NCBI RefSeq assembly: GCF_039654945.1
Contig: NW_027361794.1
Location: 18,104,001 to 18,168,000, forward strand
Direction of reading: 5' to 3'
Length of the DNA: 64,000 bases
From: Dendrobates tinctorius
Taxonomy: Eukaryota
Shown: positions 21,763 to 46,305 of the stretch, in pieces
Layout: the number at the start of each line of letters is the position of its first letter
Numbering within the stretch: position 1 is the stretch's first letter
Notes under the pieces: model-generated
Database searches by the model: none
Told to the model about the DNA's origin: nothing
Seen by the model: only the letters and a program-made list of their open reading frames with translations
Position numbers and translations under genes: made by a program

Positions 21763-21864
21763 CCTTGATGGGTAAAACAGGAAAATTCTCTTAAGTAGAA
21801 GATCTTCACTGAGAGGATCCGATATTGTAGAGAAATGAATGAGAAGATGAGCCGATGTAACATC

Positions 21865-22802
21865 ATAGAGAATAATGGGGCCTCCAGCACCGACCTCCAC
21901 TCGCAGAGCCGCACTCCACATAGAGAATAATGGAGCCTCCAGCACCGACCTCCACCCGCAGAGCCGCACTCCACATAGAGAATAATGGAGCCTCCAGCAC
22001 CGACCTCCACCCACAGAGCCGCGCTCCACATAGAGAATAATGGAGCCTCCAGCACCGACCTCCACCCGCAGAGCCGCACTCCACATAGAGAATAATGGGG
22101 CCTCCGGCACCGACCTCCACCCGCAGAGCCGCACTCCACATAGAGAATAATGGAGCCTCCAGCACCGACCTCCACCCGCAGAGCCGCACTCCACATAGAG
22201 AATAATGGAGCCTCCAGCACCGACCTCCACCCGCAGAGCCGCACTCCACATAGAGAATAATGGAGCCTCAGGCACCAACCTCCACCCTCAGAGCCGCACT
22301 CCACATAGAGAATAATGGAGCCTCCGGCACCGACCTCCACCCGCAGAGCCGCACTCCACATAGAGAATAATGGAGCCTCCGGCACCGACCTCCACCCGCA
22401 GAGCCGCACTCCACATAGAGAATAATGGCGCCTCCGGCACCGACCTCCACCCGCAGAGCCGCACTCCACATAGAGAATAATGGAGCCTCCAGCACCGACC
22501 TCCACCCACAGAGCCGCACTCCACATAGAGAATAATGGAGCCTCCCGCACCGACCTCCACCCACAGAGCCGCACTCCACATAGAGAATAATGGAGCCTCC
22601 AGCACCGACCTCCACCCGCAGAGCCGCACTCCACATAGAGAATAATGGAGCCTCCGGCACCGACCTCCACCCGCAGAGCCGCACTCCACATAGAGAATAA
22701 TGGAGCCTCCAGCACCGACCTCCACCCGCAGAGCCGCACTCCACATAGAGAATAATGGAGCCTCCGGCACTGACCTCCACCCGCAGAGCCGCACTCCACA
22801 TA
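21865..22802 (-). repeat. 55-bp minisatellite, about 17 copies
   Basis: Unit (gene sense) ATGTGGAGTGCGGCTCTGCGGGTGGAGGTCGGTGCTGGAGGCTCCATTATTCTCT. Confidence 0.97.
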
Positions 22803-23059
22803 TATGGCAGCTCTGTGCGCACAGGACCTGTCATGAGGTCACAGGAGGGGAGGAGTCAGGGGTCACATGATCAGGGCCTCAGTGTATGCAGGACTCTGCT
22901 GTGCTGGTTGTCATGGTGCTGGATGAGGGGAAGTTTCTGTGTGGGGTCAGGAGGGGTTTACAGGGTGGATGTAGCAGAGCCGCGTGTGTACGAGACGTAC
23001 AGAGCCGAGTCGCATGTGTACGGAGAGGAGCCGTGTTCGGAGTGGAGCTGCGTGTCTGT

Positions 23060-25496
23060 CCGGATGAACCCTCTGGAAAAGTTCTCCTGAATATACTCCG
23101 ACATGGCCTGAGTCTCCTCTGGAGATAAAGGGTAGATCCTTTTCCTGGGCGGCGAGGAACCTGGAACAAGCTTGATCGGGCAATCATACAGGCGGTGTGG
23201 AGGAAGGACCTCAGCCTCCTTCTTATTGAAGACGTCCGTATAGCCCCAATAAGCCGAAGGGAGACCTGCGGGAGCAGAGGTGGACTGTGGGAGATTAACA
23301 GGACGAATTGGCTGCATACACTGCTTCTGGCAGGAGGATCCCCCAACGTAGCACATCACCCGAGCACCAATCAAGGATAGGTTCATAGGACCAGAGCCAA
23401 GGCAACACAAGCAACAGTGCGTGTGAGAGGTTCGGTAGTATGTACAAGGCAATGCTCTCCTAATGAAGTGCCCCAATCTGTAGTACTATTTCTTCGGTCA
23501 CCATGGTGACGAGCTCTGGCAAAGGTCTTCCATCAACCGATGCAATCAAACGTGGTCTGTCCAGGGAAACAACAGGTATCTGAAGCCTCCTGACAGTCTT
23601 GAGACTACTTTAATAAAGTTGCCTGCCACACCCGAATCCACATAGGCCACCTCGGAGTAATGTCACTGCTCCAGGTATTTCAAAACTTAAAAAGTCAAGG
23701 GAGATGAGGAATCAGGAACTCCTAAGAAGGCCTCCCCTACCTGTCCTAGAGGAAGAAGTAAACCATCCTCTCTGGAAGCCTTGCAGGATCGTTCCTGGGA
23801 ACACAAATCTATGCATGTGGCCAGGGAGATTAGATCCTCCAAGGAGGTTGAAGTATCTCGCCCCGCGAGCTCATCCTTAATCCAGCCTGACAGCCCATGC
23901 CAGAAAGCACCAACCAGAGCCTCATTATTCCATCCCAACTCGGAGGGTAGGATGCGGACGCGAATGGCGCACTGAGCTACTGACAGGGAACCTTGGCGAA
24001 GGTTGAAAAGGGACCCAGTCATGAAGGCCAGCCATCCTGGTTCATCGAAGACCCTGCGAAAAGTCTCCAAAAAAGCTGCCAATTGGGAGACAATGGGGTC
24101 ATCACGCTCCCACAGGGGATTCACCCAAGCCAAGGCCTCTCCCTCTGGAAGAGATAAAATGAAAGCCACCTTTGCCCGGTCGGTGGGATACCACAGGGGC
24201 AGGAGTTCAAAATGGATGCTGCACTGAGTCAAAAAACGCCTGCACAGATTGGGAAAACTTAGGTGGCTTGCAAGCACGAGGCAGGAAATGTGGCAAGGAC
24301 ACAGAGCCAAAGCCACAGGCTGTTACCTGTACAGAAGCCGCGGAAAACGTGGTGCCAGCGGGGTCCATGGCCTGGTTATTCTGTAACGCCACAGGGAGGC
24401 GAGCAATAAGAGTAGACTCTCTGGACTGTGGAACAGATAGCTCCAGGGAGAGCTGACCTGGTGAAGACTGACCCCTATACAGGGATCATCAGGGACAGGC
24501 CCAGGGATCTCTAATTCTGTGACGACTCCTGGAGTGGACCTTCTGGGTCGTGACACCAACCCACCTAGGGCGAGCTGACCTAGTGAGGACCACTCCCTAT
24601 ACAGGGAGTGTCAGGGGCAAGCCTAAGGGGGTGAGCTACCACGACAGCTGGAACCAGGTGGCCGGCTCACAGGAGACACGAGTGATGTGTCTAGCAACAG
24701 GGAATGTGCAGAGTACAAGAGTGTGCATAGCGTAGACATAGGGACATGCAGGGTATAGGACAATACAGGGCGAGTGTACGGGAGCACTGAGAGTACAGGA
24801 CAATACAAAGCATGTACACGGGAGTACGCTAGATACAGGATAGTGCAAGGTGGGTACACGAGAGCACGTATGGCGTGCATAGACAAGCACGCCCCGGTGC
24901 GAGCAAAGCAGGGCGCGAGCGAAGGAGCACGTCTGAGTACAGAGTTAGGCAAAGTGTGCGCAGAGGGCACGCCTGAGTGCAAGGTTAGAGAGTGGGTGTG
25001 CTGAGAAGCACGACAGGGAGAAGGTAGGAGCTGAGCGTGTGCAAAGGAGTATGACAGAGCAGAGACAGATGCACACTAGCAACGTTGTGCATCCATGGAA
25101 CTAAGTATGAGAGGCGCGTGTGCGGACCCGATGGGAACCCCGGAGCGGCCGCAGCGCCAGACATGGTGACACCGGGCGTGGGGTCCTGCCCCCAGGTGAG
25201 AGCCGCGTGACTGGCGGTGTGACAAATACCACGTTAGCTGATACCAAGAGGGGCGGCTCAGATAGCGGGAGACACATGGGATAGAAGGGAAACGTAGAAG
25301 ACTGACGAACACCAGAGCACTAGAGACAGACATTCACAACGGAGTACAGGAGTATGGATGTGCAGAGCAGTGTAGAGGGTACGGAGAAGTAGAGCAGGAT
25401 ACAGGAATACAGACGTGCAGAGCAGGGTAAAGGAGTACGGACGCGCAGGGTAGAGCACACAGAGAATAGACATGGGCCTGAGTACAGGCAGATATG
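23060..25496 (-). mobile_element. Decayed Ty3/Gypsy (sushi-like) element: partial LTR, gag, protease, start of RT; 3'-truncated
   Basis: LTR end GGCGTTACA followed by ATGGACCCC. Gag CRRFLTQCSIHFEL...AKVAFILSL..GEALAW...FRRVFDEPG, protease VDSGVAGNFI, and pre-RT DVFNKKEAEVLPPHR.YDCPIKL...IYPLS..ETQAMSEYIQEN..RGFIR. Confidence 0.88.
24518..25224 (-). mobile_element. Related solo LTR nested in the Gypsy LTR
   Basis: TGT...ACA termini, imperfect 5-bp TSD (AATTC/AATAC), and a 3' portion resembling the host LTR (CCCTGTATAGGG...CACTAGGTCAGCTCGCCCT). Confidence 0.65.
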
Positions 25497-25754
25497 TACG
25501 CCTGTCCAGGAGCGTGATGCCGGGAGCCATGAAGCAAGCAGGAAGGCGGCAATTATGAGAAGATGGGAGGCGCCAAACCTGGACCTGCAACACCCATCGG
25601 ACCAGACTGCCCCCGGATAAGTACAATAAAACTTATTTATCTTATCTTTCTGGTCGGATTGGGGGCTTATCTACAGTATTATAGAATGCTGTAGATAAGC
25701 CCTGAAAGGCGGTGGCCATATCTGATATCGGCCAAACCTGGTGACAGGTTCCCT
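25497..25754. mobile_element. Kolobok/T2-type MITE, one end only
   Basis: Terminus TTAA-AGGGAACCTGTCACC on the minus strand and an internal hairpin GGGCTTATCTACAG...CTGTAGATAAGCCC. The other end is missing. Confidence 0.65.
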
Positions 25755-26147
25755 TTAATTCCAGTGAGATCATGTAATCCTGTGGTAAGGAGAGCAGAAG
25801 AGCTGATTAACTTGCATAAAAAGTGTTACACAATAGGCTGCCAACGATCTGTAGCATAGGATGGAGAACAAGAAATTGTATTCGCCATGAATGGATGAAT
25901 AATTCCAAGTGGCAGGCAACTTGGGAACCGCTATGTATACTGAAAAGATAGAACAACTATTTCAGCTGTAAAGGTAGATAGTTATGAGCTGTGAAAGTGT
26001 CCAGTATCGAGATCATGGTAACGACCGTGCTGCGTGCCAGGCGTGGTCCAAAGAAGCGTGCGCTCCATTATCCCAAGCCCGGATATATAATGTGCCGTCA
26101 GTAAAGAGAATGGCCAAAAGAATTAATAATGGGTGCTGGACCGAATA

Positions 26148-27586
26148 CAGTGGGTACGGAAAATATTCAGACCCCTTTACATTTTTCACTCTTTGTTTCA
26201 TTGCAGCCATTAAGAAAATTCAAAAAAGTTCATTATTTCTCATTAATGTACAATCTGCAGATCATTTTGACTGAAAAAAAACAGAAATGTAGAAATTTTG
26301 CAAATTTATTACAAAAGAAAAACTGAAATATCACATGGTTATAAGTATTCAGACCCTCTGGTCAGACACTCATATTTAATTTACATGCTGTCCATTTCCT
26401 TGTGATCTTCCTTGAATCGATTCTTCACCTTCATTGTAGTCCAGATGTATTTAATTAAACTGATAGGACTTGATTTGCAAAGGCACACACCTGTCTATAT
26501 AAGACCTCACAGTGCATGTCAGACCAAATGAGAATAATGAGGTCAAAGGGACTTGCCAAGGAGCTCAGACAGAATTGTGTTGAGTCACAGATCTGGCCAA
26601 GGTTACAAAAGAATTTCTGCAGTACTCAAGGTTCCTAAGAACACAGTAGCCTCCATAATCCTTAAATGGAAGAAGTTTGGAACCACGAGAAGTCTTCCTA
26701 GACCTGGCCGTCCAGCCAAACTAAGCAATCGTTGGCGAAGAGCCTTGGTAAGAGAGGTAGAAGAAGAACCCCAAGATCACTGTGGCTGAGCTCCACAGAT
26801 GCAGTAGGGAGATGGGAGGAAGTTACACAAAGTTAAATATTACTGCAGCCCTCCACCAGTCGGGCCTTTATGGCAGAGTGGCCTGACAGAATCCCCTCCT
26901 CAGTGCAAGACATATGAAAACCCGCATTGATTTTGCTAAAAAAACATGAAGGACTCCGAGACTATGAGAAATAAGATTATCTGGTCTGATGAGACGAAGA
27001 TAGAATTATCACCAAAAAGGTCTAAGCGGTACCTGTGGAAAAAAACAGGCACTGCTCATCACCTGCCCAATACAATCCTAACAGTGAAACATGGTGGTGG
27101 CAGCATCATGCTATGGGGGTGTTTTTCAGCTGCAGGGACTGGATGACTGGTTGACATTGAAGGAAACTTGAATATGGCCAAGTAGAGAGATATCCTGGAT
27201 GAAAACCTCTGCCAGAGTGCTTTGGACCTCAGAATTGGTCAAAGGTTCACCTTCCAACAAGACAATGACCCTTAAGAACACAGCTAAAATAGGAAAGGAG
27301 TGACTTCAGAACAACTCTGTGACCATTCTTGACTGACCCAGACAGATCCCTGACTTAAACCCAAGTGAGCATCTCTGAAGGACCTGAAAATGTCTGTCCA
27401 CCAAAGTTCACCTTCCAAGCTGACGGAACTGGCGTGGATCTGCAAGGAAGAATGACAGATGATCCCCAAATCCAGGGGTGAAAAACTTTTTGCATCATTC
27501 CCAAGACGACTCATGGCTGTACTAGCTCAAAAGGATGCCTCTACTCAATACTGAGCAAAAGGTCTGAATACTTTCTGTACCCACTG
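26148..27586 (+). mobile_element. Tc1-like DNA transposon, full length, transposase decayed
   Basis: TA-flanked TIRs CAGTGGGTACGGAAAATATTCAGACC / GGTCTGAATACTTTCTGTACCCACTG. Fragments [54 protein letters not shown] and FQQDNDP. Confidence 0.95.
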
Positions 27587-27876
27587 TATGTATGGAGATA
27601 AACATGAAAAAGGAAGCATTATACCTATAGAGGGTGGAGTGGTGAAAAAAGTGTTTCCTCTATGAGCAACCTATTAATGTGTGTGAATATTAGCGGTGAG
27701 CTGTAAAGTGTTAAAGTGTGGATAAACACTTAAGAAAAATGAAAATAAGGGACTAGTGCATGCAATATTACTGTGCAAAAATGGAAATAATAAAAGTGCG
27801 GATGTGCTGCTAAGTACTAAACTGAAAATTATCCCAATTGTAAAAGATGTTTTTTGCTGTTAATGTGAATAGTTAA

Positions 27877-28578
27877 GGCTAGTTTCACACTTGCTTTTTT
27901 TTGCAGCGCGTTTTTCCCGCAAAAAAACGCATTGAAAAAACGCATACAAACGCATACAGATGCTGCGTTTTTTTCAAGCATTTTTATGAGCATGCATGAA
28001 AAAAACGCAGCGTTTTTATGCGTTTGTATGCGTTTTTAGTGCGTTTTTACCACATTTGCGTTTTTTTCCAACATTAGGTGGCCCCTCACACTAACCCAAA
28101 CCATGACTTTACTAACCCTGACCCTGACCCTAACCCTAACCCTTAACCAAACCATACCCTGATCCTAACCCTGACCCTAACCCTAACCCCCTTAATTAAC
28201 CCTAACTCTAACCCAAACCCCTAAATTCCATTGTCTAAACGAATGGTAAAAAAAAAACGCATGTGCAAAAAAACGCATACATAAGCATGCCAATGCGCAC
28301 ATATGCTCACCATAGACTTATAATGGGTGTCTTGCTGTAAAAAAACGCATTGCGCGCGCATGCGTTTTTTTGAGGCAAGTCGGACGCCCAAAAAATGCAA
28401 CAGGATGCATTTTGTGCGCCCGAGCGCATACCGCAAAAAAACGCATGCGCGGAAAAACGCATACAAACGCATGTGTATGCGCACATAAGCGCATCCCATG
28501 CAAAATATAGGAAAAAAAAAACGCATGCGTTTTTTAGCGCTAAAATCCCGCAAAAAAAACGCAAGTGTGAAACCAGCC
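27877..28578. mobile_element. PIF/Harbinger MITE with a telomere-like (CCCTAA/CCCTGA)n core
   Basis: TIRs GGCTAGTTTCACACTTGC / GCAAGTGTGAAACCAGCC, TAA TSD, AAAACGCA sub-repeats and a hexamer tract at about 28110-28223. Confidence 0.88.
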
Positions 28579-28651
28579 TAAGCAAGTTAAAGATTAAGAG
28601 ATGTCTAAAAGGTCTAAAGTTAAAGATGACACGTTTCCTTTATATTTTAGG

Positions 28652-28654
<3 letters not shown>

Positions 28655-28694
<40 letters not shown>

Positions 28695-28917
28695 TACAGG
28701 CCAAAAGTTTGGACACACCTTCTCATTGAAAGAGTTTTCTTTATTTTCATGACTATGAAAATTGTAGATTCACTCTGAAGGCATCAAAACTATGAATTAA
28801 CACATGTGGAATTATATAATTAGCAAAAAAAGTGTGAAACAACTGAAAATATGTCTTATATTCTAGGTTCTTAAAAGTAGCCACCTTTTGCTTTGATTAC
28901 TTATTTGCACATTCTTG
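28655..28917 (+). mobile_element. (TA)n microsatellite followed by a truncated Tc1 terminal repeat
   Basis: (TA)n then CAGTACAGGCCAAAAGTTTGGACACACC, a typical vertebrate Tc1 terminus. Similarity appears to end near 28917, where the PLE2 tail abuts. Confidence 0.7.
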
Positions 28918-31900
28918 AACCCAATACCAATGAGTATGGTGGAAGATGATGCTGACAAAGTGCCAAATGAAAATAATATATACAGCAACACGTAAAAATA
29001 AAAACACCTTTATTGAAATATAAATGGGTGTACACTTAAAATAAATAAAAAGGCATCCCAAATAAATGCGTAATGTTGAATTATAATAAACTTCAACATA
29101 GGGTAAAATATATACCCATAGAGAACAGGCTCAATGCTATACAGTAGAAGAAATGACTGTACACTTATTAAAGCCCCCCCAAAAAATATGTATACAATGC
29201 ACAATATAATAATAAATAACCAAAAAGTATATATATATATACAGTGTGCAAATAATAACAACTGCTGTGCATACAAAGTGCAATAAAATAAGAAGTGCAA
29301 TGAAAAATAGATAAATGATATGCAGTGCACAATTAGAAGGGTGACACTACTGAGGTGCCACACAATGTGAAAAAAGAAGAAATGGGAGCTAGGAATGGAC
29401 AGAGTAATACCTAATGAGCCAGTGGATGGTGCCTGGGAATGCCTGTGAACGCGCCCCGACGCGCGTTTCGGAATAGAACTTCCTTCGTCAGGGGGTGGGT
29501 ATAAGACTGGTCGGTACATCCTTATATACTGGACTAATTAGCGGGCAGGTCACATAACGGCGCATGCGCCGCCGCCGCGACCCGGAAGACACATCGCGCG
29601 CGGCGTCACATGACCAAGTACCGCCGGGTAAACCCGGCGTGTCCGGCCATGAGGAGACGCCGTCGCCATGTGAACAACCGGCGCCGAGGCGGCGCATGCG
29701 CACCAGTGCCCGTCCATGAGAAATTGAGGGCTGTGTAAGTACAGCTGTTGCTGCATAAAACCTCATAACTTAGTACATCACTGCAATGGATGTATTACTA
29801 ATGGGGACAAGATTATATACATATATATATATGTAAAAATGAATAAAAAGAAAATAAATAGTGAAAAAAATATATAATAACAATTAAATATGTGCAATAA
29901 TAATTAATATAATTATATACAATGAGGTGCATAAACACATGAGAAACAATATGTGTGACAATTAAGAAAAAAAAAAAATAAAAAAAAAAAAAAATAAAAA
30001 TAAAGAGTAAAAAATAAAAAAATAATAGAAAAATGAAGCGTGAGAATAAAATGACAATTAATATAACATGCCAAAAATTATTATATGAATGCTGTTTCAA
30101 CATCCAAATACCATAATATAATGTGTAAATACAATATATATGTGCGCAAGTCTTGTCACTTTTTCTTGTTAATCAATGTGAATGATCCACCATGACACAT
30201 ATGTCGACCAGACCATCTAAAATAAATATACAAAATGTATAAAATATTAATAAGTGTACAAGATATACTATTCATAAAAACGGAATAAAAGAAAGACTCT
30301 CGTTCAAACCCAGTGGGGACACAGTATTCAGTGTCCAAATCCACTGGGTTTCTAATTGAGCAAGACGTTTGCTGATATTGCCTCCCCTAATCCCCCTACA
30401 AATCATGTCAATCCCAGACACCTTTAATAAAGTAGGATCACAGTTGTGATACATTTTAAAATGTTTTGGCAAGGTTTTAAGGGAGGCAATATCATCAACC
30501 TCCCCAGCTGCCTTTATGCCCAAGACATGCTCGCGAACCCTCACCTTGAGCTGGCGAGTGGTGAGGCCAACGTAGATGAGGGAACACGGGCATGTAGCAT
30601 AGTAAATCACAGCTGTTGATGAACAAGTGATAGATTTTTTGATATTGTAGACACGCAATCCGTCAGAACTAGTAAAAGAATGAGCTCTGACAATGTTACA
30701 ACAGGCAACACAAGAACCGCAGGGTTTGCACCCCACGGATCGTGTGTATTGAGTCATGAAATTATTTGCCGGTATAGGAATATAATGACTTTTAACCAAC
30801 CGGTCACCAAGATTTGATGATCTGCGAAAAGCCAATGTTTGGAAAGTCACCAATATACTTGGAGAGTATCGGGTCATTTTTTAAGATAAGATTCTATTTA
30901 AAGAAATTTTGGCCTATCTGTTCATTTTGACCATTAAACGTGGTTATAAACCTAACCAACTCCTTAGATTCAGATCTATTCGTGTCAGTATAAAGAGCAT
31001 TATGACGTGACGTGTGCATAGCCCTGTTGAAGGCTCTCTTCAATGATCGCCTGCTATACCCACGTTCGAGGAATCTCTCTTTTAATAAATCAGCCTGTTT
31101 TAAAAAATCAGTGTCTGTAGAACAAATCCGTCTAAGACGTAGGAATTGTCCAATGGGTATTGAATTTATAAGAGTACGAGGGTGAGAGGATGAAGCGTGG
31201 AGGAGTGCATTAACAGAGGTGTGTTTTCTAAATAAATCTGTCTGAAGAAAATTGTCCGAATCTCTCCTCACTAGGACATCAAGGAACTCGATGGTTTTCA
31301 AATCACTATGATGTGTGAGATGTACATTGATATTATTAGAATTTAATACATCAATGAAATCAGGTAACACACCGATGGGATCCTGCCAAATAAAGAAAAT
31401 GTCGTCAATGTAGCGTGTCCAAAAGAGAACACGCTCCATTTGTTCAATCTTTCCAGATAAAAAAAGGTCCCTTTCCCACAGACCCAGGAACAGGTTGGCG
31501 TAAGATGGGGCAAAGGAGGCACCCATGGCTATTCCCTGGGTCTGTAGGAAAAAGGAATCCTTGAAAATAAAAAAATTGTGTGACAATGCAAACTCTAATA
31601 AATTAATAAAAAATATAATAAAAGCTCGTGAAAAGGAAGAATGTTGTAAAAAATAAGACACAGCCGCTATCCCATCGGTGTGCTTGATGTTGGTGTATAA
31701 AGATTCAACGTCACATGTGACAAAAGAAGAATCTTCATCGATATGCAAACCATCGACTTTCCTGAGGAAATCATTGGTATCCCTAGTATATGATGGGAGG
31801 GCAATGACAAATGGTTGTAAGATATGGTCAATATATTTATTTACATTTTCTAAAAAGTTACCCCTCCCCGATATAATGGGCCTACCAGGTGGTATCTCTT

Positions 31901-32150
31901 TATTTTTATGTATTTTGGGTAGCAGATATAGGGTGGGAACGGTGGGTTCATGAACTTGTAAGGCCAAAAAGAGGTCATTGGAAATAATATCATCCTCTTT
32001 AGCATCATTCAGTAATTTTTTCAATTCAGCCGGGAATTTCAAAAGAGGATTAAACGTCAGTCTCTTATAACAATCCAAATTATCTAGCTGACGAAATGCC
32101 TCATTTTCGTACATAACTTTAGGCCATACCACCACATTCCCACCCTTATC
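28918..32150 (-). mobile_element. Penelope-like element 2 (Neptune-type), 5'-truncated at the DKG motif
   Basis: RT 30894-32135 (DKGGNVVV, YLLPKIHK, PGRPIIS, CDVESLYTNI, QTQGIAMG, RYIDD) and CxxCxxC plus GIY-YIG 30272-30877 (VIYYATCPCSLIYVGLT, GLNE). A hammerhead and AATAAA lie in the tail. The 3' boundary is approximate. Confidence 0.95.
29454..29495 (-). ncRNA. Minimal type I hammerhead ribozyme (PLE2)
   Basis: CCCC-CTGACGA-A-GGAA-GTTCTA-TTCC-GAA-ACGCGCGT-C-GGGG: canonical core, palindromic stem III, GUC cleavage triplet. Confidence 0.88.
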
Positions 32151-34680
32151 TGGAAAGATTGAACAAATGGATCTGGTTCTCTTTTGGACACGCTACATTG
32201 ACGACATTTTCTTTATTTGGCAGGATCCCATCGGTGTGTTACCTGATTTCATTGATGTATTAAATTCTAATAATATCAATGTATATCTCACACATCATAG
32301 TGATTTGAAAACCATCGAGTTCCTTGATGTCCTAGTGAGGAGAGATTCGGACAATTTTCTTCAGACAGATTTATTTAGAAAACACACCTCTGTTAATGCA
32401 CTCCTCCACGCTTCATCCTCTCACCCTCGTACTCTTATAAATTCAATTCCCATTGGACAATTCCTACGTCTTAGACGGATTTGTTCTACAGACACTGATT
32501 TTTTAAAACAGGCTGATTTATTAAAAGAGAGATTCCTCGAACGTGGGTATAGCAGGCGATCATTGAAGAGAGCCTTCAACAGGGCTATGCACACGTCACG
32601 TCATAATGCTCTTTATACTGACACGAATAGATCTGAATCTAAGGAGTTGGTTAGGTTTATAACTACGTTTAATGGTCAAAATGAACAGATAGGCCAAAAT
32701 TTCTTTAAATAGAATCTTATCTTAAAAAATGACCCGATACTCTCCAAGTATATTGGTGACTTTCCAAACATTGCTTTTCGCAGATCATCAAATCTTGGTG
32801 ACCGGTTGGTTAAAAGTCATTATATTCCTATACCGGCAAATAATTTCATGACTCAATACACACGACCCGTGGGGTGCAAACCCTGCGGTTCTTGTGTTGC
32901 CTGTTGTAACATTGTCAGAGCTCATTCTTTAACTAGTTCTGACGGATTGCGTGTCTACAATATCAAAAAATCTATCACTTGTTCATCAACAGCTGTGATT
33001 TACTATGCTACATGCCCGTGTTCCCTCATCTACGTTGGCCTCACCACTCGCCAGCTCAAGGTGAGGGTTCGCGAGCATGTCTTGGGCATAAAGGCAGCTG
33101 GGGAGGTTGATGATATTGCCTCCCTTAAAACCTTGCCAAAACATTTTAAAATGTATCACAACTGTGATCCTACTTTATTAAAGGTGTCTGGGATTGACAT
33201 GATTTGTAGGGGGATTAGGGGAGGCAATATCAGCAAACGTCTTGATCAATTAGAAACCCAGTGGATTTGGACACTGAATACTGTGTCCCCACTGGGTTTG
33301 AACGAGAGTCTTTCTTTTATTCCGTTTATATGAATAGTATATCTTGTACACTTATTAATATTTTATACATTTTGTATATTTATTTTAGATGGTCTGGTCG
33401 GCATATGTGTCATGGTGGATCATTCACATTGATTAACAAGAAAAAGTGACAAGACTTGCGCACATATATATTGTATTTACACATTATATTATGGTATTTG
33501 GATGTTGAAACAGCATTCATATAATAATTTTTGGCATGTTATATTAATTGTCATTTTATTCTCACGCTTCATTTTTCTATTATTTTTTTATTTTTTACTC
33601 TTTATTTTTATTTTTTATTTTTTTATTTTTTATTTTTTTCTTAATTGTCACACATATTGTTTCTCATGTGTTTATGCACCTCATTGTATGTAATTATATT
33701 AATTATTATTGCACATATTTAATTGTTATTATATATTTTTTTCACTATTTATTTTCTTTTTATTCATTTTTACATATATATATGTATATAATCTTGTCCC
33801 CATTAGTAATACATCCATTGCAGTGATGTACTAAGTTATGAGGTTTTATGCAGCAACAGCTGTACTTACACAGCCCTCAATTTCTCATGGACGGGCACTG
33901 GTGCGCATGCGCCGCCTCGGCGCCGGTTGTTCACATGGCGACGGCGTCTCCTCATGGCCGGACACGCCGGGTTTACCCGGCGGTACTTGGTCATGTGACG
34001 CCGCGCGCGATGTGTCTTCCGGGTCGCGGCGGCGCATGCGCCGTTATGTGACCTGCCCGCTAATTAGTCCAGTATATAAGGATGTACCGACCAGTCTTAT
34101 ACCCACCCCCTGACGAAGGAAGTTCTATTCCGAAACGCGCGTCGGGCAGCGTTCACAGGCATTCCCAGGCACCATCCACTGGCTCATTAGGTATTACTCT
34201 GTCCATTCCTAGCTCCCATTTCTTCTTTTTTCACATTGTGTAGCACCTCAGTAGTGTCACCCTTCTAATTGTGCACTGCATATCATTTATCTATTTTTCA
34301 TTGCACTTCTTATTTTATTGCACTTTGTATGCACAGCAGTTGTTATTATTTGCACACTGTATATATATACTTTTTGGTTATTTATTATTATATTGTGCAT
34401 TGTATGCATATTTTTTGGGGGGGCTTTAATAAGTGTACAGTCATTTCTTCTACTGTATAGCATTGAGCCTGTTCTCTATGGGTATATATTTTACCCTATG
34501 TTGAAGTTTATTATAATTCAACACTACGCATTTATTTGGGATGCCTTTTTATTTATTTTAAGTGTACACCCATTTATATTTCAATAAAGGTGTTTTTATT
34601 TTTACGTGTTGCTGTATATATTATTTTCATTTGGCACTTTGTCAGCATCATCTTCCACCATACTCATTGGTATTGGGTTC
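32146..34680 (+). mobile_element. Inverted, shorter copy of PLE2 (RT C-terminal half, GIY-YIG, tail)
   Basis: ORFs 32167-32712 and 32806-33333 mirror 30894-31440 and 30272-30800, including the shared FFK* stop. Confidence 0.95.
34107..34146 (+). ncRNA. Minimal type I hammerhead ribozyme (mirror copy)
   Basis: CCC-CTGACGA-A-GGAAGTTCTATTCC-GAA-ACGCGCGT-C-GGG. Confidence 0.85.
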
Positions 34681-35006
34681 AAGAATGTGCAAATAAGTAA
34701 TCAAAGCAAAAGGTGGCTACTTTTAAGAACCTAGAATATAAGACATATTTTCAGTTGTTTCACACTTTTTTTGTTAATTATATAATTCCACATGTTAATT
34801 CATAGTTTTGATGCCTTCAGAGTGAATCTACAATTTTCATAGTCATGAAAATAAAGAAAACTCTTTCAATGAGAAGGTGTGTCCAAACTTTTGGCCTGTA
34901 CTGTATATATATATATATATATATATATATTTGCCTAAAATATAAAGGAAACGTGTCATCTTTAACTTTAGACCTTTTAGACATCTCTTAATCTTTAACT
35001 TGCTTA

Positions 35007-35714
35007 GGCTGGTTTCACACTTGCGTTTTTTTTGCGGGATTTTAGCGCTAAAAAACGCATGCGTTTTTTTTTTCCTATATTTTGCATGGGATGCGCTTAT
35101 GTGCGCATACACATGCGTTTGTATGCGTTTTTCCGCGCATGCGTTTTTTTGCGGTATGCGCTCGGGCGCACAAAATGCATCCTGGTGCATTTTTTGGGCG
35201 TCCGACTTGCCTCAAAAAAACGCATGCGCGCGCAATGCGTTTTTTTACAGCAAGACACCCATTATAAGTCTATGGTGAGCATATGTGCGCATTGGCATGC
35301 TCATGTATGCGTTTTTTTGCACATGCGTTTTTTTTTTACCATTCGTTTAGACAATGGAATTTAGGGGTTTGGGTTAGAGTTAGGGTTAGTTAAGGGGGTT
35401 AGGGTTAGGGCCAGGGTTAGGATCAGGGTATGGTTTGGTTAAGGGTTAGGGTTAGGGTCAGGGTCAGGGTTAGGGTTAGTAAAGTCATGGTTTGGGTTAG
35501 TGTGAGGGGCCACCTAATGTTGGAAAAAAACGCAAACGTGGTAAAAACGCACTAAAAACGCATACAAACGCATAAAAACGCTGCGTTTTTTTCATGCATG
35601 CTCATAAAAATGCTTGAAAAAAACGCAGCATCTGTATGCGTTTGTATGCGTTTTTTCAATGCGTTTTTTTGCGGGAAAAACGCGCTGCAAAAAAAAGCAA
35701 GTGTGAAACTAGCC
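35007..35714. mobile_element. PIF/Harbinger MITE with (TTAGGG)n-like core (mirror)
   Basis: Mirror of 27877-28578, one hexamer longer. Confidence 0.88.
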
Positions 35715-36004
35715 TTAACTATTCACATTAACAGCAAAAAACATCTTTTACAATTGGGATAATTTTCAGTTTAGTACTTAGCAGCACATCCGCACTTTTA
35801 TTATTTCCATTTTTGCACAGTAATATTGCATGCACTACTCCCTTATTTTCATTTTTCTTAAGTGTTTATCCACACTTTAACACTTTACAGCTCACCGCTA
35901 ATATTCACACACATTAATAGGTTGCTCATAGAGGAAACACTTTTTTCACCACTCCACCCTCTATAGGTATAATGCTTCCTTTTTCATGTTTATCTCCATA
36001 CATA

Positions 36005-37442
36005 CAGTGGGTACAGAAAGTATTCAGACCTTTTGCTCAGTATTGAGTAGAGGCATCCTTTTGAGCTAGTACAGCCATGAGTCGTCTTGGGAATGATGCA
36101 AAAAGTTTTTCACCCCTGGATTTGGGGATCATCTGTCATTCTTCCTTGCAGATCCACGCCAGTTCCGTCAGCTTGGAAGGTGAACTTTGGTGGACAGACA
36201 TTTTCAGGTCCTTCAGAGATGCTCACTTGGGTTTAAGTCAGGGATCTGTCTGGGTCAGTCAAGAATGGTCACAGAGTTGTTCTGAAGTCACTCCTTTCCT
36301 ATTTTAGCTGTGTGCTTAGGGTCATTGTCTTGTTGGAAGGTGAACCTTTGACCAATTCTGAGGTCCAAAGCACTCTGGCAGAGGTTTTCATCCAGGATAT
36401 CTCTCTACTTGGCCATATTCAAGTTTCCTTCAATGTCAACCAGTCATCCAGTCCCTGCAGCTGAAAAACACCCCCATAGCATGATGCTGCCACCACCATG
36501 TTTCACTGTTAGGATTGTATTGGGCAGGTGATGAGCAGTGCCTGTTTTTTTCCACAGGTACCGCTTAGACCTTTTTGGTGATAATTCTATCTTCGTCTCA
36601 TCATACCAGATAATCTTATTTCTCATAGTCTCGGAGTCCTTCATGTTTTTTTAGCAAAATCAATGCGGGTTTTCATATGTCTTGCACTGAGGAGGGGATT
36701 CTGTCAGGCCACTCTGCCATAAAGGCCCGACTGGTGGAGGGCTGCAGTAATATTTAACTTTGTGTAACTTCCTCCCATCTCCCTACTGCATCTGTGGAGC
36801 TCAGCCACAGTGATCTTGGGGTTCTTCTTCTACCTCTCTTACCAAGGCTCTTCTCCAACGATTGCTTAGTTTGGCTGGACGGCCAGGTCTAGGAAGACTT
36901 CTCGTGGTTCCAAACTTCTTCCATTTAAGGATTATGGAGGCTACTGTGTTCTTAGGAACCTTGAGTACTGCAGAAATTCTTTTGTAACCTTGGCCAGATC
37001 TGTGACTCAACACAATTCTGTCTGAGCTCCTTGGCAAGTCCCTTTGACCTCATTATTCTCATTTGGTCTGACATGCACTGTGAGGTCTTATATAGACAGG
37101 TGTGTGCCTTTGCAAATCAAGTCCTATCAGTTTAATTAAATACATCTGGACTACAATGAAGGTGAAGAATCGATTCAAGGAAGATCACAAGGAAATGGAC
37201 AGCATGTAAATTAAATATGAGTGTCTGACCAGAGGGTCTGAATACTTATAACCATGTGATATTTCAGTTTTTCTTTTGTAATAAATTTGCAAAATTTCTA
37301 CATTTCTGTTTTTTTTCAGTCAAAATGATCTGCAGATTGTACATTAATGAGAAATAATGAACTTTTTTGAATTTTCTTAATGGCTGCAATGAAACAAAGA
37401 GTGAAAAATGTAAAGGGGTCTGAATATTTTCCGTACCCACTG
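36005..37442 (-). mobile_element. Tc1-like transposon (mirror)
   Basis: TA-flanked CAGTGGGTAC TIRs, mirror of 26148-27586. Confidence 0.95.
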
Positions 37443-37835
37443 TATTCGGTCCAGCACCCATTATTAATTCTCTTGGCCATTCTCTTTACTGACGGCACAT
37501 TATATATCCGGGCTTGGGATAATGGAGCGCACACTTCTTTGGACCACGCCTGGCACGCAGCACGGTCGTTACCATGATCTCGATACTGGACACTTTCACA
37601 GCTCATAACTATCTACCTTCACAGCTGAAATAGTTGTTCTATCTTTTCAGTATACATAGCGGTTCCCAAGTTGGCTGCCACTTGGAATTATTCATCCATT
37701 CATGGCGAATACAATTTCTTGTTCTCCATCCTATGCTACAGATCGTTGGCAGCCTATTGTGTAACACTTTTTATGCAAGTTAATCAGCTCTTCTGCTCTC
37801 CTTACCACAGGATTACATGATCTCACTGGAATTAA

Positions 37836-38093
37836 AGGGAACCTGTCACCAGGTTTGGCCGATATCAGATATGGCCACCGCCTTTCAGGGCTTATCTACA
37901 GCATTCTATAATACTGTAGATAAGCCCCCAATCCGACCAGAAAGATAAGATAAATAAGTTTTATTGTACTTATCCGGGGGCAGTCTGGTCCGATGGGTGT
38001 TGCAGGTCCAGGTTTGGCGCCTCCCACCTTCTCATAATTGCCGCCTTCCTGCTTGCTTCATGGCTCCCGGCATCACGCTCCTGGACAGGCGTA
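37836..38093. mobile_element. Kolobok/T2-type MITE end (mirror)
   Basis: TTAA-AGGGAACCTGTCACC terminus. Confidence 0.65.
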
Positions 38094-41000
38094 CATATCT
38101 GTCTGTACTCAGGCCCATGTCTATTCTCTGTGTGCTCTACCCTGCGCGTCCGTACTCCTTTACCCTGCTCTGCACGTCTGTATTCCTGTATCCTGCTCTA
38201 CTTCTCCGTACCCTCTACACTGCTCTGCACATCCATACTCCTGTACTCCGTTCTGTATATCTGTCTCTAGTGCTCTGGTGTTCGTCAGTCTTCTACGTTT
38301 CCCTTCTATCCCATGTGTCTCCCACTATCTGAGCCGCCTCTCTTGGTATCAGCTAACGTGGTATTTGTCACACCGCCAGTCACGCGGCTCTCACCTGGGG
38401 GCAGGACCCCACGCCCGGTGTCACCATGTCTGGCGCTGCGGCCGCTCCGGGGTTCCCATTGGGTCCGCACACGCGCCTCTCATACTTAGTTCCATGGATG
38501 CACAACGTTGCTAGTGTGCATCTGTCTCTGCTCTGTCATACTCCTTTGCACACGCTCAGCTCCTACCTTCTCCCTGTCGTGCTTCTCAGCACACCCACTC
38601 TCTAACCTTGCACTCAGGCGTGCCCTCTGCGCACACTTTGCCTAACTCTGTACTCAGACGTGCTCCTTCGCTCGCGCCCTGCTTTGCTCGCACCGGGGCG
38701 TGCTTGTCTATGCACGCCATACGTGCTCTCGTGTACCCACCTTGCACTATCCTGTATCTAGCGTACTCCCGTGTACATGCTTTGTATTGTCCTGTACTCT
38801 CAGTGCTCCCGTACACTCGCCCTGTATTGTCCTATACCCTGCATGTCCCTATGTCCACGCTATGCACACTCTTGTACTCTGCACATTCCCTGTTGCTAGA
38901 CACATCACTCGTGTCTCCTGTGAGCCGGCCACCTGGTTCCAGCTGTCGTGGTAGCTCACCCCTTTAGGCTTGCCCCTGACACTCCCTGTATAGGGAGTGG
39001 TCCTCACTAGGTCAGCTCGCCCTAGGTGGGTTGGTGTCACGACCCAGAAGGTCCACTCCAGGAGTCGTCACAGAATTAGAGATCCCTGGGCCTGTCCCTG
39101 ATGATCCCTGTATAGGGGTCAGTCTTCACTAGGTCAGCTCGCCCTGGAGCTATCTGTTCCACAGTCCAGAGAGTCTACTCTTATTGCTCGCCTCCCTGTG
39201 GCGTTACAGAATAACCAGGCCATGGACCCCGCTGGCACCACGTTTTCCGCGGCTTCCGTACAGGTAACAGCCTGTGGCTTTGGCTCTGTGTCCTTGCCAC
39301 ATTTCCCGCCTCGTGCTTGCAAGCCACCTAAGTTTTCCCAATCTGTGCAGGCGTTTTTTGACTCAGTGCAGCATCCATTTTGAACTCCTGCCCCTGTGGT
39401 ATCCCACCGACCGGGCAAAGGTGGCTTTCATTTTATCTCTTCCAGAGGGAGAGGCCTTGGCTTGGGTGAATCCCCTGTGGGAGCGTGATGACCCCATTGT
39501 CTCCCAATTGGCAGCTTTTTTGGAGACTTTTCGCAGGGTCTTCGATGAACCAGGATGGCTGGCCTTCATGACTGGGTCCCTTTTCAACCTTCGCCAAGGT
39601 TCCCTGTCAGTAGCTCAGTGCGCCATTCGCGTCCGCATCCTAGCCTCCGAGTTGGGATGGAATAATGAAGCTCTGGTTGGTGCTTTCTGGCATGGGCTGT
39701 CAGGCTGGATTAAGGATGAGCTCGCGGGGCGAGATACTTCAACCTCCTTGGAGGATCTAATCTCCTTGGCCACATGCATAGATTTGTGTTCCCAGGAACG
39801 ATCCTGCAAGGCTTCATAGAATCATAGAATCATAGAATCGTAGAGTTGGAAGGGACCTCCTGGGCCATCTGGTCCAACCCCCTGCTCAAAGCAGGATTCG
39901 CTAAATCATCCCAGTCAGATGTCTGTCCAGCCTCTGTTTGAAGACTTCCATTGAAGGAGAACTCACCACTTCTCGTTGCAGCCTGTTCCACTCATTGATC
40001 ACTCTAACTGTCAAAAAGTTTTTTCTAATATCTAATCTGTGTCTCCTCCCATTCAGTTTCATCCCATTGCTTCTAGTCTTTCCTTGTGCAAATGAGAATA
40101 AAGTTGATCCTTCTACAATGTGACAGCCCTTTAGATATTTGTAGACAGCAATTAAGTCTCCTCTCAGTCTTCTCTTTTGCAAACTAAACATTCCCAAATC
40201 CTGCAACCTTTCCTCATAAGACAGGGTTTGCAGACCGGTCACCATTCTGGTCGCTCTTTTCTGAACTTGCTCCAGTTTGTTGATGTCTTTTTTAAAATGT
40301 GGTGCCCAAAACTGGACACAATATTCCAGATGAGGTCTGACCAAAGAGGAGTAGAGGGAAATAATGACTTCACGTGATCTAGACTGTATGCTTCTGTTAA
40401 TACATCCTAGAACTGCATTTGCCTTTTTTGCTGCTGCATCACACTGTTGACTCATATTCAGTCTGTGATCTATTAGTATACCCAAGTCTTTTTCACATGT
40501 GCTGTCACTTAGCCCTATTCCTCCCATTCTATATATGCTTTTTTCATTTTTATTGCCCAGATGTAGTACTTTGCATTTCTCCCTGTTAAAAACCATTCTG
40601 TTAGTTACTGCCCACTTCTCCAGTTTATTTAAATCTTTTTGAATCCTCTCTCTCTCTTCTCTAGTATTAGCTATCCCTCCTAGCTTTGTGTCATCAGCAA
40701 ATTTAATCAGTTTACCCTCAATTCCTTCATCTAAATCGTTGATAAAGATGTTGAACAATACAGGGCCCAGGACAGAGCCCTGTGGTACCCCACTTGAGAC
40801 ATTCTTCCAACTGGATGTGCAGCCATTTACGACCACTCTTTGGGTCCGATCACTAAGCCAGCTATGAATCCACCTAACAGTTGCCTTGTCCATTCCATAC
40901 TTAGTCATTTTTTCAATTAGGATTGTATGAGAGACTTTGTCAAATGCTTTGCTGAAGTCAAGATATACTATATCTACAGCATTTCCTTGATCCACCCAAT

Positions 41001-41753
41001 CAGTGATACCGGAGAGGCTGGTTTACTTCTTCCTCTAGGACAGGTAGGGGAGGCCTTCTTAGGAGTTCCTGATTCCTCATCTCCCTTGACTTTTTAAGTT
41101 TTGAAATACATGGAGCAGTGACATTACTCCGAGGTGGCCTATGTGGATTCGGGTGTGGAAGGCAACTTTATTAAAGTAGTCTCAAGACTGTCAGGAGGCT
41201 TCAGATTCCTGTTGTTTCCCTGGACAGACCACGTTTGATTGCATCGGTTGATGGAAGACCTTTGCCAGAGCTCGTCACCATGGTGACCGAAGAAATAGTA
41301 CTACAGATTGGGGCCCTTCATTAGGAGAGCATTGCCTTGTACGTACTACCGAACCTCTCACACGCACTGTTGCTTGTGTTGCCTTGGCTCTGGTCCTATG
41401 AACCTATCCTTGATTGGTGCTCGGGTGATGTGCTACGTTGGGGGATCCTCCTGCCAGAAGCAGTGTCTGCAGCCAATTCGTCCTGTTAATCTCCCACAGT
41501 CCACCTCTGCTCCCGCAGGTCTCCCTTCGGCTTATTGGGGCTATACGGTCTCCCTTCGGCTTATTGGGGCTATACGGACGTCTTCAATAAGAAGGAGGCT
41601 GAGGTCCTTCCTCCACACCGCTCGTATGATTGCCCGATCAAGCTTGTTCCAGGTTCCTCACCGCCCAGGAAAAGGATCTACCCTTTGTCTCCGGAGGAGA
41701 CTCAGGCCATGTCGGAGTATATTCAGGAGAACTTTTCCAGAGGGTTCATCCGG
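38094..41753 (+). mobile_element. Decayed Gypsy element (mirror), with nested solo LTR 38366-39072 and an arm-specific CR1 insertion
   Basis: Mirror of 23060-25496. The gag ORF 39274-39819 ends at the CR1 tail. Confidence 0.88.
39815..41008 (-). mobile_element. CR1 LINE, 5'-truncated, right arm only
   Basis: Uninterrupted 364-aa RT C-terminus (YLDFSKAFDKV, SGVPQGSVLGP, KFADDTKL, YSSLVRPHLEYC) and an (ATTCTATG)n 3' tail. The empty site is visible at about 23775. Confidence 0.97.
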
Positions 41754-42042
41754 ACAGACAAGCACACACACACAGACACACACGCAGCTCCACTCCGAAC
41801 ACGGCTCCACTCCGTACACCTCGTACACATGCGACTCGGCTCTGTACGTCTCGTACACACGCGGCTCTGCTACATCCACCCTGTAAACCCCTCCTGACCC
41901 CACACAGAAACTTCCCCTCATCCAGCACCAAGACAACCAGCACAGCAGAGTCCTGCATACACTGAGGCCCTGATCATGTGACCCCTGACTCCTCCCCTCC
42001 TGTGACCTCATGACAGGTCCTGTGCGCACAGAGCTGCCATAT

Positions 42043-45000: not shown

Positions 45001-46305
45001 ATTATTCTCTATGTGGAGTGCGGCTCTGCGGGTGGAGGTCGGTGCTGGAGGCTCCATTATTCTCTATGTGGAGTGCGACTCTGTGTGTGGAGGTCGGTGC
45101 CGGAGGCTCCATTATTCTCTATGTGGAGCGCGGCTCTGCGGGTGGAGGTCGGTGCTGGAGGCTCCATTATTCTCTATGTGGAGTGCGGCTCTGCGGGTGG
45201 AGGTCGGTGCTGGAGGCTCCATTATTCTCTGTGTGGAGTGCGGCTCTGCGGGTGGAGGTCGGTGCCGGAGGCTCCATTATTCTCTATGTGGAGTGTGGCT
45301 CTGCGGGTGGAGGTCGGTGCTGGAGGCTCCATTATTCTCTATGTGGAGTGCGGCTCTGCGGGTGGAGGTCGGTGCTGGAGGCTCCATTATTCTCTATGTG
45401 GAGTGCGGCTCTGCGGGTGGAGGTCGGTGCAGGAGGCGCCATTATTCTCTATGTGGAGTGCGGCTCTGAGGGTGGAGGTTGGTGCCGGAGGCTCCATTAT
45501 TCTCTATGTGGAGTGCGGCTCTGCGGGTGGAGGTTGGTGCCAGAGGCTCCATTATTCTCTATGTGGAGTGCGGCTCTGCGGGTGGAGGTCGGTGCTGGAG
45601 GCTCCATTATTCTCTGTGTGGAGTGCGGCTCTGCGGGTGGAGGTCGGTGCTGGAGGCTCCATTATTCTCTATGTGGAGTGCGGCTCTGCGGGTGGAGGTC
45701 GGTGCTGGAGGCTCCATTATTCTCTATGTGGAGTGTGGCTCTGAGGGTGGAGGTCGGTGCCGGAGGCTCCATTATTCTCTATGTGGAGTGCGGCTCTGCG
45801 GGTGGAGGTCGGTGCCGGAGGCTCCATTATTCTCTATGTGGAGTGTGGCTCTGCGGGTGGAGGTCGGTGCTGGAGGCTCCATTATTCTCTATGTGGAGTG
45901 CGGCTCTGCGGGTGGAGGTCGGTGCCGGAGGCTCCATTATTCTCTATGTGGAGTGCGGCTCTGCGGGTGGAGGCAAGTGCTGGAGGCTCCATTATTCTCT
46001 ATGTGGAGTGCGGCTCTGCGGGTGGAGGTCGGTGCTGGAGGCTCCATTATTCTCTATGTGGAGTGCGGCTCTGCGGGTGGAGGTCGGTGCTGGAGGCTCC
46101 ATTATTCTCTATGTGGAGTGCGGCTCTGCGGGTGGAGGTCGGTGCCGGAGGCTCCATTATTCTCTATGTGGAGTGCGGCTCTGCGGGTGGAGCTCGGTGC
46201 TGGAGGCTCCATTATTCTCTATGTGGAGTGCGGCTCTGCGGGTGGAGGTCGGTGCTGTAGGCTCCATTATTCTCTATGTTGATTGCGGCTCTGCGGGTGG
46301 AGGTA
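42043..46305 (+). repeat. 55-bp minisatellite, about 77 copies
   Basis: Same unit as 21865-22802, with one 2-bp-shorter unit near 44627. Confidence 0.97.

What the first reader, a model, noticed from the sequence alone, without database searches (positions are those of the whole stretch)
28918..34680. A >60-kb palindrome whose axis is a fold-back inside a Penelope RT gene
Seen: PLE2 is 5'-truncated at its DKG motif and immediately turns into an inverted copy of itself starting 685 bp inside. The inversion does not stop at the element end but continues for at least 25 kb through host sequence, duplicating a KRAB-ZNF gene. Known: PLE insertions often carry an inverted upstream partial copy, and PLE1 in this window shows the normal version of about 0.6 kb. 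Inference: either PLE-associated fold-back synthesis ran on into the flank, or a break in the PLE was repaired by fold-back (breakage-fusion-bridge-like). Either would be a route for ZNF cluster expansion. Serious alternative: an assembler used a long inverted PLE repeat to join two haplotypes back to back.
Basis: partly seen in the sequence, partly recalled or inferred. Interest (0 to 1): 0.8.

Follow-up and report, generated by a model that had tools for sequence, protein, structure and literature searches.

The report
Giant palindrome centred on Penelope retroelement
In this poison-frog assembly at least 60 kb reads as a mirror image around two facing copies of a Penelope jumping gene, doubling a KRAB zinc-finger gene; the centre looks made by a polymerase, but I could not show that both halves lie on one chromosome and are not the two parental copies joined by the assembler.

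Summary
The left arm (3560-31460) and right arm (32146-64000, cut by the window end) are inverted copies around a 685-bp single-copy spacer. There are no N. Substitution divergence is 0.5-1.2% and evenly spread, and there are four large arm-specific differences.

The axis lies in a Penelope-like element (PLE2). The left copy is cut at its DKGG motif and the right copy 685 bp further in. The two overlap by a probable 5-bp microhomology. Three clustered substitutions lie 26-29 bp inside the right arm. PLE2 carried only one in-frame stop when the arms split, so it was young. Each arm holds a KRAB-ZNF gene.

The anatomy fits fold-back priming from the 3' end of a Penelope first-strand cDNA, or snap-back at a head-to-head Penelope pair. 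That argues against a random chimeric join.

Whether the mirrored flanks are real stays open. No run was listed for the junction words. No other assembly of the locus could be reached. The arm differences also look like ordinary haplotype differences.

My odds: real Penelope-nucleated palindrome about 0.5, haplotypes joined back to back about 0.38, break in a bystander element about 0.1.

The scan earlier noted smaller fold-back copies of flanks (0.7 and 3.5 kb) on other DNA of this genome.

The parts
3560..31460 (.). Left arm of the palindrome (at least 27.9 kb; its outer limit is set only by the window end of the partner)
31461..32145 (-). Single-copy spacer (685 bp): the RT N-terminal part of the left PLE2 copy, from DKGG to just before YIDD
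32146..64000 (.). Right arm (at least 31.9 kb, runs off the window)
28918..32150 (-). PLE2 left copy, 5'-truncated at the DKGG motif. The coding part 32150-30272 matches P0001 residues 35-658.
32146..34680 (+). PLE2 right copy, 5'-truncated 685 bp further in. It reads through to the natural stop with one in-frame stop
32146..32150 (+). Junction overlap TTATC. It belongs both to the K/D codons of the left copy and to the start of the right copy, and is complementary to GATAA at 31456-31460. This is probable 5-bp microhomology (range 2-7 bp)
32172..32175 (+). Three substitutions within 4 bp, 26-29 bp inside the right arm (ER in the left copy, DL in the right). The R of the left arm matches two of four homologues, so the right arm is probably the derived one
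30894..30896 (-). In-frame stop shared with the right copy (32710-32712). It is the only frame break that predates the arm split
30832..30832 (-). One extra base in the left copy only; the frame shifts here (arose after the split)
13456..21828 (-). KRAB-ZNF gene, left copy: finger exon 13456-14577, KRAB-region exons about 20986-21828, with PLE1 in the intron
46940..55254 (+). KRAB-ZNF gene, right copy: KRAB box exon 47517-47645, finger exon 54217-55254 (one finger fewer)
15466..19187 (+). PLE1, an older Penelope insertion with a canonical short inverted 3' fragment (15466-15774 against 18891-19187, about 93%). Its mirror copy is at 49625-53328
39816..41008 (-). 5'-truncated CR1 insertion in the right arm only, with an (ATTCTATG)n tail at 39816. 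The empty site is at 23775 in the left arm
42042..46304 (.). 55-bp minisatellite, about 77 units in the right arm against about 17 units at 21864-22802 in the left
11504..12642 (.). 1139 bp present in the left arm only, flanked by a 2-bp AG repeat
33579..33649 (.). They, and their mirror at about 29956-30026, were sent to no search tool afterwards

Best explanation
The head-to-head junction of the two PLE2 copies is a biological, polymerase-made junction, and the mirrored flanks are a real inverted duplication nucleated by it.

The + strand of the left side ends at the axis with the polarity of a Penelope first-strand cDNA: host DNA, then the PLE 3' end at 28918, running to the 3' end near 32150. 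Its last bases (TTATC) paired with GATAA 685 nt upstream, either on the same strand or on a sister copy. Synthesis from this primer copied the element back to its 3' end and went on into the host flank. This would have happened in one of two ways. Either it occurred during an aberrant insertion (cDNA snap-back or bridging of sister chromatids), or it came later, when a break beside an ordinary head-to-head Penelope pair let the two 2.5-kb arms anneal and prime fill-in.

The result is a hairpin-type inverted duplication that must have been resolved by a second junction outside the window. It doubled a KRAB-ZNF gene. The arms have since diverged by about 0.6%.

Shown: the structure, the microhomology, the mutation cluster, and the youth of PLE2 at the split. 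Inferred: the polymerase steps, and that both arms lie on one molecule.
For: (1) The arms are two distinct sequences from the first 30 bp onward, not one molecule read twice. There are 201 substitutions plus a CR1 insertion, a 1.1-kb indel, a 3.3-kb minisatellite difference and a zinc-finger unit difference.
(2) There is no N and no adapter-like filler at the axis.
(3) The junction overlap TTATC is complementary to 31456-31460. The left copy's homology to PLE proteins reaches the D codon inside the right arm.
(4) A cluster of 3 substitutions lies 26-29 bp from the junction, and the left R matches 2 of 4 homologues. Only 4 such clusters occur in the inner 7.7 kb, so chance proximity is about 1.6%, judged post hoc.
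(5) PLE2 had a single in-frame stop and no frame shift in 1.9 kb of coding sequence when the arms split. The axis therefore sits in a young element, in the orientation that leaves the cDNA 3' end at the axis.
(6) Divergence in the PLE part (20/2543 = 0.79%) equals that of the adjoining host part (31/5143 = 0.60%) within error. This is expected if both were copied in one event.
(7) Only about eight 1-bp indels separate the arms over about 25 kb of aligned sequence, so the consensus is accurate. From this I infer HiFi-grade data, for which a 2.5-kb repeat at 99.2% should not confuse an assembler (inference).
(8) There are precedents: an L1 bridging sister chromatids head to head in fold-back inversions (PMC7058536), and a break near natural inverted repeats giving fold-back priming and inverted duplication (PMC10622511).
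(9) Earlier notes in this genome describe smaller fold-back copies of flanks beside retro-insertions (not checked by me).
Against: No run was listed for the two sampled junction words, although four runs of one sample hold 0.51-0.55 of the words of the surrounding 9.6 kb. A palindrome with a 685-bp spacer would be expected to show arm-to-arm gene conversion or central deletions, yet the differences are Poisson-spread and the longest identical run is 962 bp. The divergence and the kinds of difference are typical of two haplotypes; VGP genomes show 0.1-1.1% heterozygosity (PMC8081667). No outer boundary lies in the window. If the copying happened at insertion, the shared stop must already have been in the RNA or the first strand.
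Confidence: 0.5

Rival explanations
1. Assembly artefact: the two arms are the maternal and paternal copies of one locus, joined back to back. There are two routes. The assembler may have turned round inside a genuine head-to-head Penelope pair (2.5-kb arms). Or a fold-back chimeric read may have sent the path back along the other haplotype. In either case the true continuation (the 5' part of PLE2 or another flank) lies elsewhere in the assembly.
For: Divergence of 0.5-1.2% with evenly spread differences and no conversion tracts. The differences are of the kinds that segregate as alleles: TE presence or absence, minisatellite length, finger number, microsatellites. The mirror symmetry runs to the window end with no outer junction. 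No run was listed for the junction words. Complex tandem/inverted PLE insertions are reported to trouble assemblies, especially short-read ones (PMC8557442). Heterotype false duplication is a common error class (PMC8081667).
Against: There is no gap between the copies, whereas the scaffolded false duplications illustrated in the VGP paper (PMC8081667) carry a gap between the copies. Arms of 28-32 kb or more exceed one read. A random chimeric join would have to fall by chance inside a young PLE, in the cDNA orientation, at a microhomology, and next to a mutation cluster. A turn-round inside a true PLE pair needs the paralogue divergence of the PLE copies to equal local heterozygosity by coincidence. 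It also needs a long-read assembler to fail on a 2.5-kb repeat that carries 20 mismatches.
Confidence: 0.38
2. A real palindrome in which the Penelope element is a bystander. A double-strand break happened to fall inside a resident PLE2. The resected 3' end folded back on 5-bp microhomology and primed repair synthesis (a fold-back inversion, breakage-fusion-bridge type), possibly using the sister or the homologue as template.
For: The spacer plus microhomology plus nearby mutation cluster is the general signature of fold-back and replicative repair (PMC10622511). The shared stop shows that PLE2 carried at least one defect before the split.
Against: It requires the break to fall by chance in a nearly intact element, on the side that keeps the 3' part. 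My rough estimate of that chance is a few per cent, and it is an inference. The same lack of read support applies.
Confidence: 0.1
3. A host palindrome existed first, and a Penelope element was later inserted at its centre, both broken ends priming on the same RNA.
For: It would give mirror-image PLE/host boundaries and two copies of different length.
Against: The host arms are not more diverged than the PLE arms (0.60% against 0.79%), so no earlier palindrome is visible. It also needs two rare events at one point.
Confidence: 0.02

Closest known systems
Retrotransposition-bridged fold-back inversion (L1 joining sister chromatids head to head; Rodriguez-Martin et al. 2020, PMC7058536)
   Same: A retroelement sits in inverted, head-to-head arrangement exactly at the axis of a large inverted duplication of host DNA.
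   Different: Those events are somatic, in human tumours, made by L1 (APE endonuclease, poly(A)), and inferred from read clusters and copy-number steps. Here the element is a Penelope-like RT/GIY-YIG element in a frog germline assembly, the arms are 0.6% diverged, and copy number is untested.
Fold-back priming at a break near inverted repeats (Al-Zain et al. 2023, PMC10622511; earlier palindrome work in Tetrahymena, yeast and CHO cells recalled from memory)
   Same: Inverted repeat arms with a short loop, priming from the folded 3' end, and fill-in that yields an inverted duplication centred on the repeat.
   Different: That work is experimental, in nuclease-deficient yeast with short natural repeats, and the product is a dicentric that needs secondary stabilisation. 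Here any stabilising second junction lies outside the window.
Canonical Penelope insertion with an adjacent inverted 5'-truncated copy (Craig et al. 2021, PMC8557442); PLE1 in this window is an example
   Same: Two copies head to head, both 3' ends outward, 5' truncation at different points.
   Different: In the canonical form the inverted repeat stops at the element ends and the flanks are the two sides of one target. Here the symmetry continues for at least 25 kb of host DNA.
Heterotype false duplication in long-read assemblies (Rhie et al. 2021, PMC8081667)
   Same: Two copies differing at the level of heterozygosity, a gene apparently duplicated.
   Different: Those are described as separate haplotype contigs placed in the primary assembly; the scaffolded cases illustrated there are tandem with a gap between. 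This one is inverted, gap-free and joined at a microhomology inside a retroelement.

Membership tests
Penelope-like element (endonuclease-bearing) | PLE-type reverse transcriptase | tested here: met
   The 413-aa ORF matches dendrobatid PLE proteins at 58% identity with E 1e-149. DKGG and YIDD motifs are present. The Pfam RVT_1 hit alone is below its cut-off.
Penelope-like element (endonuclease-bearing) | C-terminal GIY-YIG endonuclease | tested here: met
   tblastn against P0001 residues 471-658 gives 56% identity. The Pfam GIY-YIG hit is weak (E 0.007, below its cut-off). The right copy reads through this domain.
Penelope-like element (endonuclease-bearing) | Hammerhead ribozyme in the terminal repeat | tested here: inconclusive
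   Hammerhead_1 at 29452-29497 (-) scores 25.1 bits against a gathering score of 34.
Penelope-like element (endonuclease-bearing) | Target-site duplication flanking the insertion unit | not testable with these tools
   Both flanks are mirror images, and the other side of the original target is not in the window.
Fold-back inverted duplication | Inverted arms around a short single-copy spacer, with microhomology at the one novel junction | tested here: met
   The spacer is 685 bp. TTATC at 32146-32150 is complementary to 31456-31460.
Fold-back inverted duplication | Both arms on one molecule and a doubled copy number | not testable with these tools
No run was listed for the junction words.
Heterotype false duplication (assembly error) | Each copy at half read depth with haplotype-specific variants | not testable with these tools
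   No reads could be laid.
Heterotype false duplication (assembly error) | Copies meet at a contig boundary or gap | tested here: not met
   There is no N anywhere in the 64 kb, and the axis is continuous PLE sequence.
Gene-conversion-maintained ampliconic palindrome (sex-chromosome type) | Arm identity near 99.9% or conversion tracts | tested here: not met
   Substitution divergence is 0.49-1.17%. The differences are Poisson-spread and the longest identical run is 962 bp.

The most novel reading that the evidence does not exclude
An aberrant Penelope retrotransposition itself made a germline palindrome of more than 60 kb. The first-strand cDNA snapped back (or bridged sister chromatids), and synthesis ran on into the chromosome, duplicating a KRAB-ZNF gene. 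With the smaller cases noted elsewhere in this genome, that would make Penelope elements a recurrent source of inverted segmental duplications in frogs.
Probability: 0.25. Interest if true: 0.7.

Novelty: new variant of a known kind. Interest (0 to 1): 0.45.

Why it matters
If real, this would be a germline, sequence-resolved counterpart of the L1-bridged fold-back inversions so far seen only in tumours. It would be made by a different retroelement class whose insertion mechanism is still unknown. It would also show one concrete way in which KRAB-ZNF genes are copied. If it is an artefact, it is a useful warning: head-to-head Penelope pairs may turn assemblies round and create false gene duplicates in large amphibian genomes.

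Tried and rejected

(2) The run search with the 60-bp junction stretch listed none, but only 2 words were sampled. The four holder runs keep only about half of the neighbouring words, so this is weak evidence.

(3) I tried to reach read-derived or alternative contigs through proteins. The exact look-ups of the 181-aa and 413-aa axis ORFs are not on record. Word searches with the 413-aa ORF and with the 225-aa spacer part gave best hits of only 58% identity.

(4) I tried to extend beyond the window through the ORF at 62118-63941. It is a multicopy retroelement ORF with a LAP2alpha-like domain, best hit 73%, with no record from this genome.

(5) The junction 36-mer has no match in metagenome contigs; this was a long shot.

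(6) I looked for other copies of the Tc1-like tail beside PLE2 to fix the element's 3' end, and found none in the window. No target duplication of 8 bp or more was found for PLE1.

(7) A fold-back read of a single molecule is rejected, because the arms differ from 26 bp onward and carry kilobase-scale differences.

(8) A palindrome maintained by gene conversion is rejected.

(9) The species and its heterozygosity could not be fixed from the papers found.
Full report
**What is there**

A self-comparison of the window on the opposite strand gives one collinear chain of inverted matches:
- 3560-11503 pairs with 64000-56066 (99.3%).
- 13460-21867 pairs with 55335-46949 (98.1%).
- 23775-31460 pairs with 39815-32146 (98.9%).

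Only 31461-32145 (685 bp) has no partner. The window contains no N. The left arm is at least 27.9 kb and the right at least 31.9 kb. The right arm is cut by the window end, so the outer limits are unknown.

The arms are not one sequence written twice. Substitution divergence is 0.49% in the outer block, 1.17% in the middle block (which includes the zinc-finger array and a minisatellite edge) and 0.67% in the inner block, with ts/tv about 1.1. The right arm alone carries a 1.19-kb 5'-truncated CR1 with its octamer tail (39816-41008). The left arm alone carries 1139 bp (11504-12642). A 55-bp minisatellite has about 17 units on the left and about 77 on the right. The zinc-finger exon differs by one finger. 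Differences are spread as a Poisson process: the longest identical run is 962 bp and no conversion-like tract appears.

**The axis**

The minus strand of the spacer and inner left arm encodes a reverse transcriptase followed by a GIY-YIG domain. It matches Penelope-like proteins of dendrobatid frogs at up to 58% identity.

Read through the junction, the minus strand gives ...IFPDKGGNVVVWPK..., while homologues have KP[AS]DKGGN. The homology of the left copy therefore reaches the D codon at 32148-32150. The right copy starts at 32146, about 15 codons before YIDD. The two copies thus overlap by TTATC (32146-32150), which is complementary to GATAA at 31456-31460. This is a probable 5-bp microhomology; it could be 2 to 7 bp, depending on the lost original codons. 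There are no filler bases.

The + strand that ends at this point has the polarity of a first-strand cDNA primed from host DNA at the element's 3' end. Folding its last bases onto 31456-31460 gives a 685-nt loop, and extension reproduces the right arm exactly.

Three substitutions within 4 bp lie 26-29 bp inside the right arm. The left arm has the residue (R) found in two of the four homologues shown, so the right arm is probably the derived one. Only four such clusters occur in the inner 7.7 kb, so chance proximity to the junction is about 1.6%. That figure is a post hoc estimate.

**Age of the element**

The right copy reads from the junction to the natural stop with a single in-frame stop (32710-32712). 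The left copy shares that stop (30894-30896) and has in addition one extra base at 30832 that shifts the frame. When the arms split, PLE2 therefore carried one defect in 1.9 kb of coding sequence, so it was young.

Divergence between the two PLE copies (20 substitutions in 2543 bp, 0.79%) equals that of the adjoining host DNA (31 in 5143 bp, 0.60%) within error.

PLE1, which is present in both arms, shows the ordinary Penelope form: a 309-bp inverted 3' fragment next to a 5'-truncated copy, with arms about 93% identical. It is therefore roughly ten times older than the palindrome.

**Genes**

Each arm holds a KRAB-ZNF gene. In the right arm the KRAB box exon is at 47517-47645 (Pfam E 1.3e-10) and the finger exon at 54217-55254. 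The mirror copy lies at 13456-21828, with PLE1 in the intron.

**What the anatomy argues for**

Three features hold together: the youth of PLE2 at the split, the orientation that leaves the cDNA 3' end at the axis, and a head-to-head arrangement that is the hallmark of Penelope insertions (PMC8557442). Together with the microhomology and the mutation cluster, they make a random chimeric join or a random break unlikely. I put that chance at a few per cent or less; the estimate rests on my own rough guess of PLE density.

The junction is best read as made by a polymerase that switched template. Two real routes then give mirrored flanks:
- Synthesis at the time of an aberrant insertion ran on into the host strand or bridged sister chromatids. 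L1 does this in tumours (PMC7058536).
- An ordinary head-to-head Penelope pair later served as the inverted repeat that nucleates fold-back priming after a nearby break (PMC10622511).

I cannot separate these two routes. Earlier notes of this scan describe fold-back copies of 0.73 kb and 3.5 kb of flank beside retro-insertions on other pieces of this genome. I did not check them.

**What remains open**

Nothing here shows that both arms lie on one molecule. Following the operators' rule, I sent neither those places nor their mirror (about 29956-30026) to any search tool afterwards. Only local arm-to-arm alignments in the sandbox covered them.

Four runs of one sample hold 0.51-0.55 of the sampled words of 27001-36600. 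For the 60-bp junction stretch, with 2 sampled words, none was listed. Given the half share of neighbouring words, I put the chance of such a blank at roughly 0.06-0.3 even if the junction is present, so it counts only mildly against.

Protein routes to read-derived or alternative contigs failed.

The arm differences are exactly what two haplotypes would show; vertebrate heterozygosity of 0.1-1.1% is reported in PMC8081667. A palindrome with so short a spacer would be expected to show conversion or central deletion, and none is seen.

Several points count against an artefact:
- There is no gap at the axis.
- The arms are longer than a read.
- Only about eight 1-bp indels separate the arms over about 25 kb of aligned sequence. 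That suggests accurate long reads, for which a 2.5-kb repeat with 20 mismatches is not confusing.
- A turn-round inside a true Penelope pair would require its paralogue divergence to equal local heterozygosity by coincidence.

**Verdict**

My odds are:
- Real palindrome nucleated at the Penelope junction: about 0.5.
- Haplotypes joined back to back: about 0.38.
- Real fold-back at a bystander element: about 0.1.
- Insertion into an older palindrome: about 0.02.

One long read running from the spacer across 34680, or the depth ratio of spacer to arms, would settle it.

Noticed in passing
window 4078-5454 (-) and 62118-63941 (+): A long ORF with a LAP2alpha C-terminal-like domain (Pfam E 2e-12). 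Its relatives in dendrobatid annotations often carry RVT_1 as well, so this looks like a multicopy retroelement family with a lamina-protein-like domain. The two arm copies differ in ORF length (458 against 607 aa).
   Followed up: partly
window 29452-29497 (-): A weak type I hammerhead match (25 bits, below the gathering score) in the 3' region of PLE2. Two adjacent arm differences (29453, 29454) fall inside it.
   Followed up: no
window 27923-28045: A roughly 120-nt stretch that matches many unrelated microRNA precursor models on both strands, all far below threshold. It is probably a TA-rich hairpin or MITE-like palindrome, present in both arms.
   Followed up: no
window 28690-28917 (-): The DNA directly beyond the PLE2 3' end looks like the terminal part of a Tc1-like transposon ending at a (TA)n run (recognised from memory). 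Its upstream half is not in the window. Finding that half in the assembly would locate the other side of the original PLE2 target.
   Followed up: partly
window 23687-24316 (-) and mirror 39274-39819 (+): A gag-like ORF (Retrotrans_gag/DUF4939). The right-arm CR1 insertion lies at its edge.
   Followed up: no
window 13370-14330 and 54470-55340: The zinc-finger arrays of the two KRAB-ZNF copies differ by one 84-bp finger unit. They also show about four times the background substitution density, part of which may be register shift among fingers.
   Followed up: partly
whole arms: The transition/transversion ratio between the arms is only about 1.1 (107:94), low for vertebrate neutral change. It is unexplained.
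   Followed up: no
window 1127-3594 (-): LINE-type RT ORFs lie at the left end of the window. Their mirror partner would lie beyond 64000, so it is unknown whether the symmetry goes on.
   Followed up: no
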